Source: Diadema antillarum (taxonomy: Eukaryota). From it: 64,000 bases of DNA. The notes under the pieces are model-generated. The model was not told the origin of the DNA. It worked only from the letters and a program-made list of their open reading frames with translations, and did no database searches. The stretch is taken from positions 930,001 to 994,000 of the forward strand of contig NW_027271500.1 in assembly GCF_040938485.1 (NCBI RefSeq), given 5' to 3'. The translations under genes and the position numbers were made by a program. Below are positions 10,340 to 16,631 of this stretch, piece after piece; position 1 is the first letter of the stretch; each line of letters begins with the position of its first letter.

Positions 10340-13300
10340 ATGCCGTCAGTAAAGCAGACAAACTACTTTGTATATCCGAATGTAATTGGTATGATTGCAG
10401 TTACATTAGGTCTCCTTCTAACTGCGGTAAGCTAAGCGACGGTTGGGCAGATATGTTTGTAAATTTTTTGTTGAATTAATTTAAACTTAATTCAGCTCAG
10501 ATCCTCAGATTACCATTCCCACCAGTTAGGGCCTAAATTTACTATTATAAGTTACTAGTCTAGACCCTTGCCTGAGTGTACTTATGTTGTATAATTTTGT
10601 AGTTGTACCTGTATGCACCTGTCTTGTCGAGCACCTAGACCATCGAACAAGCTAGGCATATTTATTGGTCTATCACCTGACCAGATGCCATTTTTTAAAA
10701 ATAACCAGCGATATCAGTCCGGGAAACCCGCTCATGAGGACCGCCCCCGCGTACGAGGATGGTCCCTCCTCATGAGGACCTCCCCCCTCCTCATGAGGCC
10801 CCCCGGGGAACGCCTCATGAGGCCCCCCCTTCACTTCTTATTCATCTCACATCTGACGTATAAATTGTCGCAACTTTGCACGGTGATTTTTTGTTACACA
10901 CACATGTCCACTATCCATGATGAAAAGAAGAAAAAATCCTGTCTGTTTTTTTTTTTTTAAATCGAGTTTTAATCACCCGATGCAGAGCGCCCATCAAAAC
11001 ACGGGCGCCAACGCGTTCGCACAATGCAAGACTGCCGCACCTAGCGGCCTGATCCGACTAAATATTTTCGATGCTTTTTTCTGCGGCTCTCACCTCTCCG
11101 CGCACGAATCAGCCTCGTGAAGCTGAAGTCTGACATCTTTTTACACAAATTCGTAACGAGAAAAATTAAATCAGTACTAACCTGATCTTGTCCATATATT
11201 CCAAATTACTATTCCACACTGATAGAGTAGGTGGGTAGATGACATACTCCAGTTTGTTAGCAAAATAATCACTTTGTAGGTATGACGAGTTCACTTTCTT
11301 CGTCAATTCCGCCCACGATTCCGCCGTTTGGGCGCTTTTTCTGGAATCATCCCGCGACGCGACGTACGTCGCATACATCACGCATCCAGCACATACTAAG
11401 TACCAGACTGGTATGTGCTGGATGCGTGATGTGATGCGACGTACGTCGCGTCGCGGGATGATTCCAGAGAAAGCGCCCAAACGGTAAGCGGGCGGCGGAA
11501 TCGTGGGCGGAATTGACGAAGAAAGTGAACTCGTCATACCTACAAAGTGATTATTTTGCTAACAAACTGGAGTATGTCATCTACCCACCTACTCTATCAG
11601 TGTGGAATAGTAATTTGGAATATATGGACAAGATCAGGTTAGTACTGATTTAATTTTTCTCGTTACGAATTTGTGTAAAAAGATGTCAGACTTCAGCTTC
11701 ACGAGGCTGATTCGTGCGCGGAGAGGTGAGAGCCGCAGAAAAAAGCATCGAAAATATTTAGTCGGATCAGGCCGCTAGGTGCGGCAGTCTTGCATTGTGC
11801 GAACGCGTTGGCGCCCGTGTTTTGATGGGCGCTCTGCATCGGGTGATTAAAACTCGATTAAAAAAAAAAAAAACAGACAGGATTTTTTCTTCTTTTCATC
11901 ATGGATAGTGGACATGTGTGTGTAACAAAAAATCACCGTGCAAAGTTGCGACAATTTATACGTCAGATGTGAGATGAATAAGAAGTGAAGGGGGGGCCTC
12001 ATGAGGCGTTCCCCGGGGGGCCTCATGAGGAGGGGGGAGGTCCTCATGAGGAGGGACCATCCTCGTACGCGGGGGCGGTCCTCATGAGCGGGTTTCCCGG
12101 ACTGATATAGAATAATCTGATCACAAATACTCATACTAATACTACTACTACTACTTCTACTACTACTAAGTACGAGTGTTTTTATGTCCATGTTTTCTTC
12201 TCTAGCCAGAAAATATGTTTTTGTCTTTGTATGAAAGTCATCTTGTGCTTAGATTTACAGCACTGTAGGAATTTTGAGTTGAACATTGAAGCATCCTTAC
12301 GACAAAAGAGTGAAGTGATGTAAATGATTCAAAGCAGGGTGCATGCGTACAGACAAGATCAGTGTAGAAACATGAAAAATGGCCATGTTGATCAGTTTCA
12401 CTTTTAAACCCCCTATATTATTTCTGCAGCTGTGTACCTTCAAACGAGATATTGTGCCATATGACTACCTGGGTCCTATCAGTGAGTTGGCGTACTTCCT
12501 AGCCTACAAGCAACCGGTTGTGATGCGAGCAATGTGAGCAAAATCTCTTCCTGTGCTGTGGACTTCATATTATTTTTACAGAGCCTCAAGGATGCCCAGT
12601 GCTTTTTTACATACATTTATGAATTGATCATACTGTGTACACAGTTTCAGAATCTATAGTGATTGGGGTGATGCATAAGACTGTTTTCAAAATTCATACA
12701 AAATCACAATGAACAAAAATGATGAATACAGCAGCTTCACATAAGAATGTATGATTTGGTGCTCAAAGGAAGCAGATCAGAAGAAGAAAGCAGTCAGATT
12801 GTATAGAGGTGAAGTTGTTGAGCAAGTGGTAGTGTAAGGGAATTACATTGCTGCATAATTGGGATATCTGAGCCTGCTATGTCCTCATCCTTGTTCAGTG
12901 TACATGTACAAGTGTATTATGTTTTGTGTTTTTCAGAGTATTGGTTTTTCTGGTCATGTCATCCTTATCTTAAAGTGAAAGCAGTATGTTTCCATAAGTG
13001 ACAAATTTTCAACAAGTATGATAATGAATTTTCTCTGAAGGCACAATGTAAGTGATAATTTATGAATATTCTTTGTTTTGTAATGCTCCTAAATACATAA
13101 AGGTATCATGTACAAATGTACTTTGATCATGTGGGACATGATTCAACTATCAACATTTCTTACAATTCAACCACTCATTTTGAATTTTGTGTGGTTTGTA
13201 TTTGATAGTTTTATGCTTTTTAGTGCTCAAATCATTCTTTCTCCTTTTCTCTATAGATGCTATACAGCAATATTTATGCATGTCCTGGAAGGTTGCTATG

Positions 13301-14484
13301 CCTACTACTTGGCAGGGTGAGAAGCAATGTAATTATGATTTTATTGTGATGTGTACAGTGTGTATGTTTATTCACATACTTCCAAAGGGTGTGTACAGTT
13401 CTGGTCGAGGTGAAGATTTAGCTTTTAATGTTTTGTGAGATATTCAGAAACCACTCCATGAGATGTCAAAGAGCATGCAGTTCTAAGGGGAATAAAACGT
13501 TTATTAGATGAAAATCGGTTTTGAAATGGCTGAGATATCCAAAAACAAGGTGAAACAAAGAGATACTAATAAAGTTGGGGCATGTCGCCTTTTATTATGA
13601 GCACTTTTTTGGATATCTCAGCCACTTGAAAACCAATTTTCATCAAATAAACGTTGAATCCTTTTTAGAATTACATGCTCTTCCATATTTCATAAGAGGC
13701 TTTTCGTTATCTCACTTAGGAATGTTCAAAACATGAATCCCTACCTCAACCAGTACTGTACAGTCCCTTTAAGATGGCCCAGAAGTATGACTGAACAAGG
13801 TTGTATTTAATGAAATACTGTATATGCCGTATATTCATGGAGACGAATCCCCACATGGAGAAGGATATCACGGCCAAATTATTACACATTATGTACAGTG
13901 TGTTTGCATTTCTGTTTGTGTGTGTGTGTGTGTGTGCATGAGTGAGCTTTATCTCCACATGTGACGTATTCATGTATTCTTGAGAATTACCAGTAATGTG
14001 TTGCATAAAAGAAATTACAAAGGTTTAATTCATTTTCTGATCCTTTCCCCAAACTTCATGCTCCTACTGCTGTAATGGAGGGATTCATAAGTAGGATGGT
14101 TACACTACTGGTATAAAAGTTCTCATATTACATTCAGCGCATTTTTTTTAGACACTTTCAGTATATGTGAAATATGAAAACTATCTTCACTTGTCATACA
14201 TCTGAAGTTTTGCCATCAGAATTGTTTCAAGTACTAGTAGTACATGTATCTCTATTTTATAGGTGACATAAAAACTTAACATCTTGTAGCCTCAGGGTTC
14301 TGCAGTCTATAGAATAACCTTATTCATGATGGCAGGTTATTTGTGTCGTTTTATTTTCCACAGGATGAAAGGAATCTCAGGATCAGCTCGGACTAAGTGG
14401 TTCATCTTCACTCTACTCTTCGGCATCGTGTCAATGTATCGCCTGTTGCAGTACAATCCCACCCGAGCTCAGAAGAGGGATTGA
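10340..14484 (+). CDS. TMEM254: Transmembrane protein 254 (123 aa)
   Basis: Exons 10340-10426, 12430-12533, 13257-13316 and 14364-14484 total 372 nt with GT-AG introns. Motifs PYDYLGPI, HVLEGCYA and KGISGSARTKWFIFTLLFGIVS match the family as recalled. AATAAA at 14843-14848. Confidence 0.9.
10715..12104. mobile_element. 1,390-bp foldback/palindromic DNA element with 4-bp TSD
   Basis: Arms 10715-11396 and 11411-12104 are reverse complements; 14-nt spacer; ATAT flanks both ends (10711-10714 and 12105-12108); termini CAGTCCGGGAAA; subterminal CCTCATGAGG repeats. Confidence 0.92.
13386..13768. mobile_element. Kolobok-like MITE, inverted relative to the 8551 and 24110 copies, in TMEM254 intron 3
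   Basis: Reverse complement of 24110-24492; ends CCCT|TTAA at 13765-13772. Confidence 0.75.
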
Positions 14485-15092
14485 CTCTCAGCCAGAGAAC
14501 CGGTGGTAGATCATCCCAACGGGAAGAAGGGGGTTGAAAGTTGCCACAAATTGAACAGATCATCAGAGCACAAAGTATTCCACCGAGTTGCCGTCTACAC
14601 AGAAAGAGAGTTTATCGTGATCATGTTTTAATTGAAGTGTGTTGAATATTCGTTTATCTGTATATTGTGCCTTTCCTTCTTTGATATTATATCTGAGTGT
14701 CTATTCGAGTTTGATTTGTTTTGCTCTGAAGCAGGATCTGGTCCCAAAGAGTGCAAGAGATGTGCAAAAGTTCTGTAATGTTCTTTCTGTACTGATGTTT
14801 GAGACATTGTGATAGTTTAGAGCTTCATTGTTCTAAAGGCTAAATAAAAGACTCTGAAATCAACCGTGAGACATAAGAGTACAAAATCAGGCCCAAGGCA
14901 AGGACATAAGGGGCCCCATAGTCAGTGGACTCTAGGAGATATCCCCCCCCCCCCCTCCCCCTTTGGGAATAGAAATTTTGCAAATTACTAACATAGGTGT
15001 GGTTTAGTGATAATACACAGAATTGACAAGAAAATCTGTTTCTTCAACCATACTGAATTTTACTTCCAAAGTATTAAACAGTGAGAGCAGAG

Positions 15093-16631
15093 ATGGCTAC
15101 CAGACGGATCACGTCAAGGTCTTATAAGGAGAAATATGACATCATAAAATTCATGGAGGCAAACCCCAATGCAAAGAGGAAGGATGTTGCAGCCAAATTT
15201 GATCTGAAACAAAGTTCCCTGGCAGATATTATCAAGAAGAGGGACAAAATAATCAAGACCTTTGAAAATACTGATGAGGCATGGAAAGGGACCCGAAAGA
15301 GGGTGAAAAGTGGGGTGTATGATGACGTGGCTGAAGTCCTCATAATGTGGGTCCGCCAGCAGGAGTTGTTCACAGGTGCGTCCCCACAAGGCGAAGCACT
15401 GCTGGCCCAGGCCAAGGTCTTCGCACAGGAGTTTGGACACAAGACTTGGCCTAGCCCTGCGTGGGTTAAACGCTTCATGAAAAGATATGATATCTCAACC
15501 CCAAGCAGTGCAAGCACAGAAGACGAAAACAAGGATGATGATGTAATTGCTTGGAATGAAGAAGTCCTCAAGGACTTATTCAAACGTTACAAACCACCTG
15601 ATATCTACTGTTGTGAGGAGACATGTCTCTATTGGAAACTGCTACCAGGGAAGTACTGTAATCGCAAGAGGAGTCCCGATGGAAACAGGAAAGCCAGAAA
15701 GCACATCACTATTCTGATGTGTGCAAACATGGCTGGCACTGACAAGGTGCCACTGTATGTCATCGGGCAGACGCTTAGCCCCTCTTCATTCAGGAATGTA
15801 CAATCTCTTCCCGTCGATTACAAGGCATACCAGAGAGGTGTCATGACTAAGACCTTCTTCCGAGAGTGGCTGTACAAAATAGACAGTGCTATGGGTATCC
15901 AGGACCGCAAAATTGCCATGGTGTTGGCCTCTTGTCCAGTGCATATGGAAGAAGAACTCCAGAACATTGAATTGGTCCTACTGCCAGACTGCCTGACGGC
16001 TGATTTTCTGCCAATGAACAAGGGAATAATTCACTTGCTGAAGCTGAATTACAGGCTCATTCTTTCTTCCAGACTCCTTGTGGCTGCAGAGAGCAAGACA
16101 CATTTCCATTGGGACCTCCTTGATGCAGTCCTTGCCCTTAGGTCTTCTTGGGCCAAAATCAGCACCCAGGCAATCATTGAGGCCTTCGGAAATGCCGGAT
16201 TTGCAGCCACAGCCCCTGCTGCACGAGATGCAGAAGCTCCCCCTGTGGACCCCAAATTTGATAAGAAGGAAGCACAGTTCAGGGACTTCAGAATTTTGTG
16301 GGACAAGTTGTCCAACTTGCATCCCTGTCTTCCACCCTTGGAGGAGTACGTCGTAGTGGACAATGATGGTGAGTGTCGCCAAAGGCAGAGCCACTGGAAC
16401 ACTCAGCCCTCTGTGAATGGAGATTCAGATGATGGCGAGCTTGAATGGAACACGACTCGGGATTCTCCAACCATTGAAGAAGCCTTCAAGGCGGTCAACG
16501 TCATTCGTCTCTTCAACGCTAAAACTCGCGGCCAGCCTCCAGACCTGCGCAAAGAGCTCGACAGCTACGAATCCTTTCTGGTGGGTGAGCTCGCAAAACG
16601 TTACCATCAACCGTTGCAAACAGACACCTGA
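15093..16631 (+). CDS. Tigger/pogo transposase-derived protein (TIGD/CENP-B-like), single exon, 512 aa, catalytically dead
   Basis: Intact ORF from a strong-context ATG (GAGATGG) at 15093. Psq-type HTH (SYKEKYDII...SSLADIIKKRDKI), CENP-B HTH (WVRQQ...LLAQAKVFA...WVKRFMKRY), DDE_1 fold with E/A/N at the three Asp positions, and a C-terminal SPTIEEAFKAVNVIRLF helix. No flanking TIRs seen. Confidence 0.88.
   Translation: MATRRITSRSYKEKYDIIKFMEANPNAKRKDVAAKFDLKQSSLADIIKKRDKIIKTFENTDEAWKGTRKRVKSGVYDDVAEVLIMWVRQQELFTGASPQGEALLAQAKVFAQEFGHKTWPSPAWVKRFMKRYDISTPSSASTEDENKDDDVIAWNEEVLKDLFKRYKPPDIYCCEETCLYWKLLPGKYCNRKRSPDGNRKARKHITILMCANMAGTDKVPLYVIGQTLSPSSFRNVQSLPVDYKAYQRGVMTKTFFREWLYKIDSAMGIQDRKIAMVLASCPVHMEEELQNIELVLLPDCLTADFLPMNKGIIHLLKLNYRLILSSRLLVAAESKTHFHWDLLDAVLALRSSWAKISTQAIIEAFGNAGFAATAPAARDAEAPPVDPKFDKKEAQFRDFRILWDKLSNLHPCLPPLEEYVVVDNDGECRQRQSHWNTQPSVNGDSDDGELEWNTTRDSPTIEEAFKAVNVIRLFNAKTRGQPPDLRKELDSYESFLVGELAKRYHQPLQTDT

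What the first reader, a model, noticed from the sequence alone, without database searches (positions are those of the whole stretch)
10711..12108. 1,390-bp near-perfect palindromic element inside TMEM254 intron 1
Seen: 682- and 694-bp arms with a 14-nt spacer. By eye the arms differ only by two substitutions, a 1-nt indel and an 11-nt indel (TAAGCGGGCGG, 11485-11495). ATAT TSD, CAGT termini, three CCTCATGAGG palindromes per arm, a nested GCGACGTACGTCGC palindrome near the centre, CpG-rich, no convincing ORF. It fills about 70% of the intron. Known: long short-spacer palindromes extrude cruciforms and are unstable; transcribed inverted repeats form dsRNA for ADAR or Dicer; 4-bp AT-rich TSDs occur in Sola elements. 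Inference: a young foldback derivative made by template switching from one transposon end, or kept homogeneous by arm-to-arm conversion. Every TMEM254 pre-mRNA would carry a roughly 680-bp hairpin. I cannot assign the family; it may be undescribed.
Basis: partly seen in the sequence, partly recalled or inferred. Interest (0 to 1): 0.78.

Follow-up and report, generated by a model that had tools for sequence, protein, structure and literature searches.

The report
Young foldback transposon in TMEM254 intron
The 1.39-kb palindrome is one recently inserted copy, present on only one of the animal's two chromosome copies, of a roughly 100-copy gene-less "foldback" jumping gene in a sea-urchin genome; it is a tidy example of a known kind of element, and the enzyme that moves it is still unidentified.

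Summary
Window 10715-12104 is a 1,390-bp palindrome with arms of 682 and 694 nt, a 14-nt centre, CAGT...ACTG ends and an ATAT duplication. It takes up 69.6% of intron 1 of a TMEM254 gene.

It was not made at this locus.
- About 105 copies in the assembly share the same centre, and about 540 elements share the 25-nt terminus.
- All 41 insertions examined have a 4-bp target duplication with consensus A-T-A-T.
- The 11-nt arm asymmetry sits in exactly one arm in 27 of 29 copies, so it was inherited from a source copy.

The other haplotype contig has the empty site with a single ATAT. Two further insertions are also absent from their allelic contigs. Copies differ by about 0.4%, so the family moved very recently.

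Relatives built from the same transposon end turn back at different points, so foldback formation recurred. At two arm-mismatch sites the derived base was copied to the mirror position, which points to patchy arm-to-arm correction.

No transposase partner was found. The target preference fits Sola2, which is an inference. A 10.25-kb pair of sister-family termini is the best lead.

The scan noted a foldback family with matching features (CAG...CTG ends, 4-bp TSD) elsewhere in this genome (s1-215103). Reads could not be consulted.

The parts
10711..10714 (.). Left copy of the 4-bp target-site duplication (ATAT)
   Evidence: The same 4 nt occur at 12105-12108. The allelic contig has a single ATAT.
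10715..11396 (+). Arm A (682 nt), starting CAGTCCGGGAAACCC...
   Evidence: It matches at least 40 genomic copies at 97-100%.
10715..10739 (+). 25-nt terminus shared by about 540 elements
   Evidence: 555 forward and 532 reverse matches at up to 1 mismatch, and 0 in the reversed-pattern control.
10731..10821 (+). Four subterminal copies of the palindromic 8-mer CTCATGAG (10731, 10769, 10790, 10814); inferred transposase-binding sites
   Evidence: TRF sees a weak 19-nt periodicity. The sister family has CTTATAAG at the same places.
11359..11372 (.). Nested 14-nt palindrome GCGACGTACGTCGC in arm A (mirrored in arm B)
11397..11410 (+). Asymmetric 14-nt centre TAAGTACCAGACTG, the turn-back point of the foldback
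   Evidence: A 36-mer spanning it occurs 46+59 times in the genome.
11411..12104 (-). Arm B (694 nt), the reverse complement of arm A
11485..11495 (+). 11-nt insert present in arm B only; a family-wide asymmetry
   Evidence: Present in exactly one arm in 27 of 29 copies, in either genomic orientation.
11709..11709 (+). Arm-B site where this copy carries G (pairs with arm A) while the family consensus carries a mismatching A
11808..11808 (+). Arm-B site where this copy carries the derived T that mirrors the derived A of arm A (11011)
11998..12088 (-). Mirror set of the four CTCATGAG motifs (11998, 12022, 12043, 12081)
12105..12108 (.). Right copy of the target-site duplication (ATAT)
10340..10426 (+). 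TMEM254 exon 1 coding part (ATG at 10340, donor G|GTAAGC)
   Evidence: Phase 0, in frame with exon 2.
10427..12429 (+). TMEM254 intron 1 (2,003 nt here; about 609 nt on the other haplotype)
12430..12532 (+). TMEM254 exon 2
   Evidence: PF14934 profile 3-41. Later exon pieces at 13093-13317 and 14290-14481 match profile 40-62 and 63-91.

Best explanation
This is a heterozygous, very recent insertion of a non-autonomous foldback-type cut-and-paste DNA transposon.

Shown:
- The element is one of about 105 near-identical 1.39-kb copies.
- It inserts with a 4-bp staggered cut at A-T-A-T-like sites.
- It carries no gene.
- Its palindromic form was inherited from a source copy, not made in the TMEM254 intron.

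Shown at family level:
- The arm is the left-end sequence of a non-palindromic parent lineage.
- Relatives made of the same end turn back at different points, so foldback formation happened several times.

Inferred:
- Each foldback arose by strand switching or snap-back synthesis during repair or replication of one transposon end.
- A transposase supplied in trans binds the four CTCATGAG motifs in the terminal 110 nt of each arm.
- That transposase is most likely of the Sola2 type (about 50%).
- Mismatches between arms are patch-corrected, with either arm acting as donor, probably when the arms pair with each other.
- Any TMEM254 pre-mRNA from this allele would carry a hairpin of about 680 bp. 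The consequences are untested.
For: Family and copy number:
- At least 40 scored genomic copies have arm A at 97-100% and arm B at 94-98% identity to arm A.
- 1,087 termini match the 25-mer.
- 105 copies share the centre.

Insertion chemistry:
- A 4-bp TSD is present in 41/41 insertions. The logo is A 36, T 25, A 21, T 35 of 41, and ATAT occurs 14 times.
- The empty site on contig C984 has a single ATAT. Its flanks are 98.6% and 94.7% identical to the window.
- Two more insertions are absent from their allelic contigs.

Age and inheritance:
- Copies differ from the consensus by 1-7 substitutions, with a median pairwise divergence of 0.43%.
- The 11-nt insert is in exactly one arm in 27/29 copies.

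Recurrent foldback formation:
- The non-palindromic 445-bp relative is left end 1-346 plus a 66-nt inverted terminus.
- The 549/574-bp palindromes turn back near position 289.
- Older arms continue past ...CACATAC into other sequence. Some form palindromes with spacers of about 48 or 326 nt.

Arm correction:
- Outgroups are G/C and C/G at sites 297/1094 and 396/995.
- Young copies are G/C 3, A/C 12, A/T 11 at the first site and C/G 8, C/A 18, T/A 1 at the second.
- There are six two-site combinations, and no other shared substitutions apart from length and edge variation in two homopolymer runs.

Other:
- Sola2 elements are reported with AWWT, ATAT, AAAT and ATTT 4-bp TSDs (PMC3627910).
- The RNA minimum free energy is -1401.6 kcal/mol as one hairpin.
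Against: - No autonomous partner was found. Solo termini within reach are truncated copies, and no ORF in 52 loci looks like a transposase.
- The Sola2 termini shown for amoebozoa start GA(A/G), not CAGT.
- The copy sample is biased towards the copies most like the query.
- The 'allelic' contigs are inferred to be haplotigs from 95-99% identity, not proven.
- The mirror-site changes could be an assembly-polishing artefact if short reads were used to polish.
- No read-level check was possible.
Confidence: 0.85

Rival explanations
1. The palindrome was made in place at this locus, by template switching or repair from a single inserted transposon end, or kept perfect by conversion in situ.
For: The outer 616 nt of the arms are 100% complementary here, better than the family consensus.
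Against: About 105 copies at other loci have the same centre and the same 11-nt asymmetry. The two sites that make this copy more perfect are shared with five other copies (L002, L008, L018, L024, L030), so they come from a source lineage. The empty allele shows that a whole 1,390-bp unit went in with one ATAT duplication.
Confidence: 0.02
2. It is an assembly or long-read foldback artefact, and the second arm does not exist in the animal.
For: Foldback artefacts in long reads are described (PMC12870357, listed). No reads could be laid on the locus.
Against: An artefact would not carry a precise 4-bp duplication. It would not recur as the same 1,390-bp unit at about 105 places with different flanks, and it would not leave an exact empty site in the allele.
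Confidence: 0.01
3. The family is moved by a non-Sola transposase: AcademX (3-4-bp TSD), a CMC/Chapaev-type enzyme, or an undescribed superfamily.
For: AcademX makes 3-4-bp TSDs (PMC10045372). Earlier notes describe palindromic Academ-like derivatives in this genome (s1-215072, s1-230018). CAGT termini do not match the Sola2 ends seen.
Against: TSDs are 4 bp in 41/41 insertions, never 3. No XPG remnant was found, and a PF00867 search finds only 7 host-like hits. The ATAT/ATTT-type target is what is reported for Sola2.
Confidence: 0.4
4. The element is a host-selected functional hairpin, for example a source of small RNAs or a regulator of TMEM254 splicing.
For: A perfect 680-bp hairpin would form in the pre-mRNA. 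The element is CpG-rich and unlike its surroundings.
Against: It is absent from the other allele. It is one of many dispersed copies with random flanks. There is no Rfam family above threshold. The high CpG is explained by youth.
Confidence: 0.03

Closest known systems
Foldback elements (Drosophila FB; sea-urchin TU elements)
   Same: Non-coding mobile elements that are almost entirely two long inverted arms, are multi-copy and are flanked by target duplications.
   Different: From my own knowledge, FB and TU arms are built of tandem sub-repeats and make 9- or 8-bp duplications. Here the arms are unique sequence apart from four 8-mer motifs, and the duplication is 4 bp.
Sola2 DNA transposons
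   Same: 4-bp AT-rich target duplications of the AWWT, ATAT or ATTT type (PMC3627910). Other agents report young autonomous Sola elements in this genome (unverified).
   Different: No Sola transposase has been linked to these termini. The amoebozoan Sola2 ends begin GA(A/G), not CAGT.
AcademX-derived palindromic non-autonomous elements noted in this genome (s1-215072, s1-230018)
   Same: Same genome, same foldback-of-one-end architecture with a short loop, and a 3-4-bp TSD class.
   Different: Those carry XPG-nuclease remnants, and none is detectable here. Whether the termini are shared is unknown.
MITEs
   Same: Deletion or rearrangement derivatives mobilised in trans, with high copy number and near-identical copies. 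The 445-574-bp relatives qualify.
   Different: At 1,390 bp, and fully palindromic, this member is outside the usual definition of under 800 bp.
Arm-to-arm gene conversion in large genomic palindromes (e.g. human Y; own knowledge)
   Same: A derived base on one arm is copied to the mirror site of the other arm, with either arm acting as donor.
   Different: Here it is seen across the copies of a 1.4-kb mobile element, in short patches that leave an 11-nt bulge and a T.G pair untouched.
Ginger2, piggyBac and Kolobok (other 4-bp-TSD groups)
   Same: 4-bp duplication.
   Different: Ginger ends are TGTNR, with CCGG or RTATAY targets. piggyBac and Kolobok need TTAA, which is seen in 1/41 insertions here.

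Membership tests
Foldback-type non-autonomous DNA transposon (structural class) | Element consists almost wholly of two long inverted arms | tested here: met
   682 + 694 nt arms around a 14-nt centre.
Foldback-type non-autonomous DNA transposon (structural class) | Mobile: many copies at unrelated sites with target duplications, and empty sites exist | tested here: met
Foldback-type non-autonomous DNA transposon (structural class) | No transposase gene of its own | tested here: met
   The longest ORFs are 115-123 aa with no family match.
Drosophila FB / sea-urchin TU families | Arms made of tandem sub-repeats; 9- or 8-bp TSD | tested here: not met
   TRF finds only a weak 19-nt periodicity in the terminal ~60 nt. 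The TSD is 4 bp.
Sola2 | 4-bp TSD | tested here: met
   41/41 insertions.
Sola2 | AT-rich AWWT-type target | tested here: met
   A 88%, W 68%, W 73%, T 85%; ATAT in 34%, compared with PMC3627910.
Sola2 | Autonomous partner with the same termini encoding a Sola2 DDD transposase | not testable with these tools
The lead is the terminus pair at C29:1009612-1019861.
Sola2 | Termini like described Sola2 elements | tested here: not met
   The Dictyostelid Sola2 ends start GA(A/G), while these start CAGT. The comparison is across very distant hosts, so it carries little weight.
AcademX | 3- or 4-bp TSD; XPG-nuclease/transposase remnants in derivatives | tested here: inconclusive
   The TSD length is compatible. 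No XPG signal appears in the element or near listed termini.
Ginger1 / Ginger2 | TGTNR termini; CCGG or RTATAY targets | tested here: not met
   Termini are CAGTCC. No flanking R/Y preference is seen.
piggyBac / Kolobok | TTAA target | tested here: not met
   TTAA in 1/41 insertions.
Tc1/mariner | TA duplication | tested here: not met
   TSDs such as AGGT, GTGT, AGCT and ACCC cannot be read as TA.
MITE | Under about 800 bp | tested here: not met
   1,390 bp. The shorter relatives of 445-574 bp do qualify.
TMEM254 (host gene) | Collinear match to Pfam PF14934 | tested here: met
   Three same-strand exon pieces match profile 3-41, 40-62 and 63-91 with 13.4, 14.6 and 18.9 bits. Each is below the 23-bit cut-off alone. 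The exons were searched one by one and were not joined.

The most novel reading that the evidence does not exclude
The CAGT(C/T)CGGGAAACCC elements belong to an undescribed, currently active lineage or superfamily of 4-bp-TSD transposons whose chemistry (for example hairpin or single-strand intermediates at transposon ends) routinely turns one-ended fragments into full palindromes and corrects their arms. This would explain why at least four independent palindromic families, about 1,400 elements in all, share these ends in one genome.
Probability: 0.15. Interest if true: 0.6.

Novelty: new member of a known kind. Interest (0 to 1): 0.35.

Why it matters
Three things follow for this sea urchin:
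1. A DNA transposon system has been active so recently that all three insertions that could be tested are absent from the other haplotype, so a working transposase should be recoverable.
2. The animal carries a natural allele pair of TMEM254, one with and one without a 680-bp perfect hairpin in intron 1. This allows a direct test of what such a hairpin does to splicing, editing and small-RNA production.
3. The family gives a compact case of repeated foldback formation from one transposon end, and of arm-to-arm correction in a mobile element.

None of this is unexpected to a transposon specialist.

Tried and rejected
- Solo termini: I fetched 20 loci around long or solo termini. All solo termini were truncated copies, and no ORF of 140 aa or more looked like a transposase.
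- L049: it looked like a possible long parent. Beyond the arm it is single-copy sequence with other nested repeats and no long ORF, so it was rejected as autonomous.
- Internal segments of the 2-2.6-kb relatives are other repeats, not coding remnants.
- A PF00867 (XPG_I) search for Academ gave only 7 host-like hits.
- An exact look-up of the element's 122-aa ORF in public assemblies found nothing on record.
- The key Sola, Yuan & Wessler and AcademH papers are not held.
- Searching our findings by sequence gave a blank, which means nothing.
- A TA (Tc1/mariner) reading of the ATAT site was rejected because most TSDs contain no TA.
- CpG hypermutability cannot explain the mirror-site changes, because neither site is in a CpG.

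Full report
**Observation**

The stretch is as described. The repeat finder reports inverted arms 10711-11326 / 11493-12108 (616 nt, 100%) and 11324-11374 / 11434-11484 (51 nt, 98%).

Aligning the element to its own reverse complement leaves few differences:
- one substitution at the edge of a T13/A14 run;
- one T.G pair;
- a 1-nt indel;
- an 11-nt insert in arm B (11485-11495);
- a 14-nt asymmetric centre.

The element proper is 10715-12104, with ends CAGT...ACTG, flanked by ATAT on both sides. The terminal 110 nt of each arm holds four copies of the palindromic 8-mer CTCATGAG. The rest of each arm is unique sequence (TRF).

The element is GC- and CpG-richer than the window: 48% against 39%, and CpG o/e 1.15 against 0.59. 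It has no ORF with a family match and no Rfam family above threshold. As RNA it folds into one hairpin of about 680 bp with a minimum free energy of -1401.6 kcal/mol.

**Host gene**

An ATG at 10340 opens a 29-codon exon that ends at a G|GTAAGC donor (10426/10427). An acceptor at 12429/12430 opens an exon in the same phase.

That exon and two later same-strand pieces match consecutive parts of Pfam TMEM254:
- profile 3-41, 13.4 bits;
- profile 40-62, 14.6 bits;
- profile 63-91, 18.9 bits.

Each piece is below the 23-bit cut-off alone, but they are collinear. Intron 1 is 2,003 nt, and the element plus one ATAT is 69.6% of it.

**It is a family member, not a local product**

- One arm as a query finds at least 40 scored places (1,130 candidates). 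Arm A matches at 97-100%, and a second, inverted match of about 694 nt lies 14 nt away in nearly every case.
- The 25-nt terminus occurs 555 + 532 times at up to 1 mismatch, against 0 for the reversed control.
- A 36-mer across the centre occurs 46 + 59 times.

So there are about 105 copies of this 1.39-kb palindrome among about 540 elements with these ends, in a 1.75-Gb assembly that holds both haplotypes.

In 29 copies read in full, the flanks all differ and each has a 4-bp duplication. The 11-nt insert sits in exactly one arm in 27 of 29, in either genomic orientation. The source copy was therefore already this asymmetric palindrome.

**Insertion chemistry and age**

Over 41 insertions of this and related size classes, the duplication is always 4 bp. 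The logo is A 36/41, T 25/41, A 21/41, T 35/41, and ATAT itself occurs 14 times. There is no clear preference outside the four bases.

The left flank of the window copy finds a second contig, C984, at 99%. There the flanks (98.6% and 94.7% identical) abut as ...GCGATAT|AGAATAAT..., with one ATAT and no footprint.

The same test was run on three other copies:
- One allele aligns exactly up to the junction, query 1-701 of 761.
- One stops 5 nt past the junction.
- One was inconclusive, because that element sits inside another repeat.

Copies differ from their consensus by 1-7 substitutions, with three older ones at about 1.4%. The median pairwise divergence is 0.43%. That is several-fold below the divergence between the two alleles of the flanking DNA at this locus. 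The sample favours the copies most like the query. With that caveat, the family moved very recently and is probably still mobile.

**Where the palindrome came from**

Other elements with the same ends show the arm in other contexts:
- A 445-bp form is left end 1-346 plus a 66-nt inverted terminus, and is not palindromic.
- The 549- and 574-bp forms are palindromes that turn back near position 289.
- An older subfamily (77-85% identical) carries the whole arm and then continues past ...CACATAC into unrelated sequence.
- 55 such arm ends exist. Some lie in inverted pairs 68 or 347 nt apart (start to start), which gives spacers of about 48 or 326 nt.
- A sister family of 746 bp is a 98.7% palindrome of unrelated inner sequence. 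Its end is CAGTTCGGGAAACCCACTCACAAGG, and it has four CTTATAAG motifs where this family has CTCATGAG. It has 856 + 867 termini in the genome.

Foldback formation from one end has therefore happened at least four times among elements with these ends. Strand switching or snap-back synthesis is the inferred mechanism, not a shown one.

**Arm-to-arm correction**

The family consensus has arm mismatches at element positions 297/1094 and 396/995. The window copy's only two differences from the consensus are at 11808 and 11709. These are exactly the arm-B partners of those two sites, and both changes make the arms pair.

Older relatives have G/C and C/G at these sites, on both arms. Among the 26 young copies:
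- site 297/1094 is G/C in 3, A/C in 12 and A/T in 11;
- site 396/995 is C/G in 8, C/A in 18 and T/A in 1;
- six two-site combinations occur;
- apart from length and edge variation in two homopolymer runs, these are the only substitutions shared by two or more copies.

A derived base has thus been copied to its mirror position on the other arm at two separate sites, once from arm A to B and once from B to A. Any genealogy of these copies needs homoplasy. Neither site is a CpG.

Only 3-4 of about 4,170 possible substitutions would restore a mismatch, so two or more such events by chance are very unlikely. This is a rough estimate, not a formal test.

The T.G pair and the 11-nt bulge are never corrected, so the patches are short. 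The window copy belongs to a sub-lineage shared with five other copies, so the correction did not happen at this locus. One caveat remains: if the assembly was polished with short reads, mis-assignment between arms could mimic this pattern. I could not check reads.

**Who moves it**

I found no autonomous partner.

From papers read here:
- Sola2 elements have AT-rich 4-bp duplications (AWWT; ATAT, AAAT, ATTT) (PMC3627910).
- Ginger has TGTNR ends with CCGG or RTATAY targets (PMC2836005).
- Kolobok and piggyBac need TTAA (PMC9587614).
- AcademX makes 3-4-bp duplications (PMC10045372).

The target logo fits Sola2 best. The CAGT ends do not match the Dictyostelid Sola2 ends, but that comparison is across very distant hosts.

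Other agents' notes, which I have not verified, name the genome as Diadema antillarum. They report young autonomous Sola1 (about 18 kb) and Sola2 (about 11 kb) elements, palindromic Academ-like derivatives, and a foldback family with CAG...CTG termini and 4-bp TSDs that matches this family's features.

In the last own-genome search, one pair of perfect sister-family termini lies 10,250 bp apart in inverted orientation (C29:1009612-1019861). By then I could neither fetch nor search the genome further. This is the lead to follow. I put Sola2 at about one half.

**Limits**

I went on with other tools, as its message said.
- No spanning reads, expression, editing or small-RNA data were seen. All statements about dsRNA, cruciforms or splicing are inference.
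- Repbase and Dfam could not be consulted, so I cannot say whether the family is already catalogued.

**Verdict**

This is a real, well-delimited, heterozygous insertion of a young non-autonomous foldback transposon. The kind is known and the family is probably uncatalogued. The points of added interest are the recurrent foldback formation, the mirror-site correction and the natural allele pair in TMEM254.

Noticed in passing
window 6545-6691: A solo ~147-nt right terminus of the same family (...CCCGGACTG|ACCT, with three CCTCATGAGG motifs) abuts the 3' end of a non-LTR retrotransposon fragment. That fragment carries an RT motif ...ADDVALIA... and a C-terminal Cys/His knuckle at 5000-6500.
   Followed up: partly
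L022:770-2945 (G000:C1117): The arrangement is ATAT-[1,412-bp copy]-ATAT-[756-bp sister-family palindrome]-ATAT. A second element went into the duplicated target of the first. Termini of the two families also lie within 300-570 bp of each other on C9, C12 and C23, which suggests site re-use or local hopping.
   Followed up: partly
G000:C29:1009612-1019861: A pair of perfect sister-family 25-nt termini in inverted orientation lies 10,250 bp apart. It is a candidate autonomous element, similar in size to the ~11-kb Sola2 element noted by another agent. It could not be fetched.
   Followed up: no
L043:7802-8547 and genome-wide: The sister family is a 746-bp, 98.7% palindrome with the end CAGTTCGGGAAACCCACTCACAAGG and four CTTATAAG motifs. 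It has 1,723 termini (about 860 elements) and 4-bp TSDs (AACT, ATAT, ATTT). The motif differs from this family's CTCATGAG while the terminal 15 nt stay nearly the same.
   Followed up: partly
G000:C171:633601-633689, C482:14823-14911, C865:472586-472674, C276:2294099-2294466, C533:645548-645915: Older-type arm ends occur in inverted pairs 68 or 347 nt apart (start to start). These are further independent palindromes of the same transposon end, with larger spacers. They are known from coordinates only.
   Followed up: no
window 15081-16631: A 516-aa open frame has pogo-type domains: DDE_1 at 6.5e-29, HTH_Tnp_Tc5 and CENP-B_N. This is the neighbouring 'domesticated pogo' of other notes and is unrelated to the palindrome (a TA-type family).
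   Followed up: partly
L049:940-5000 (G000:C38:964689-968749): A 4-kb stretch next to an old-type terminus found no second full-length match in an assembly that otherwise shows both haplotypes. It may be hemizygous or collapsed.
   Followed up: no
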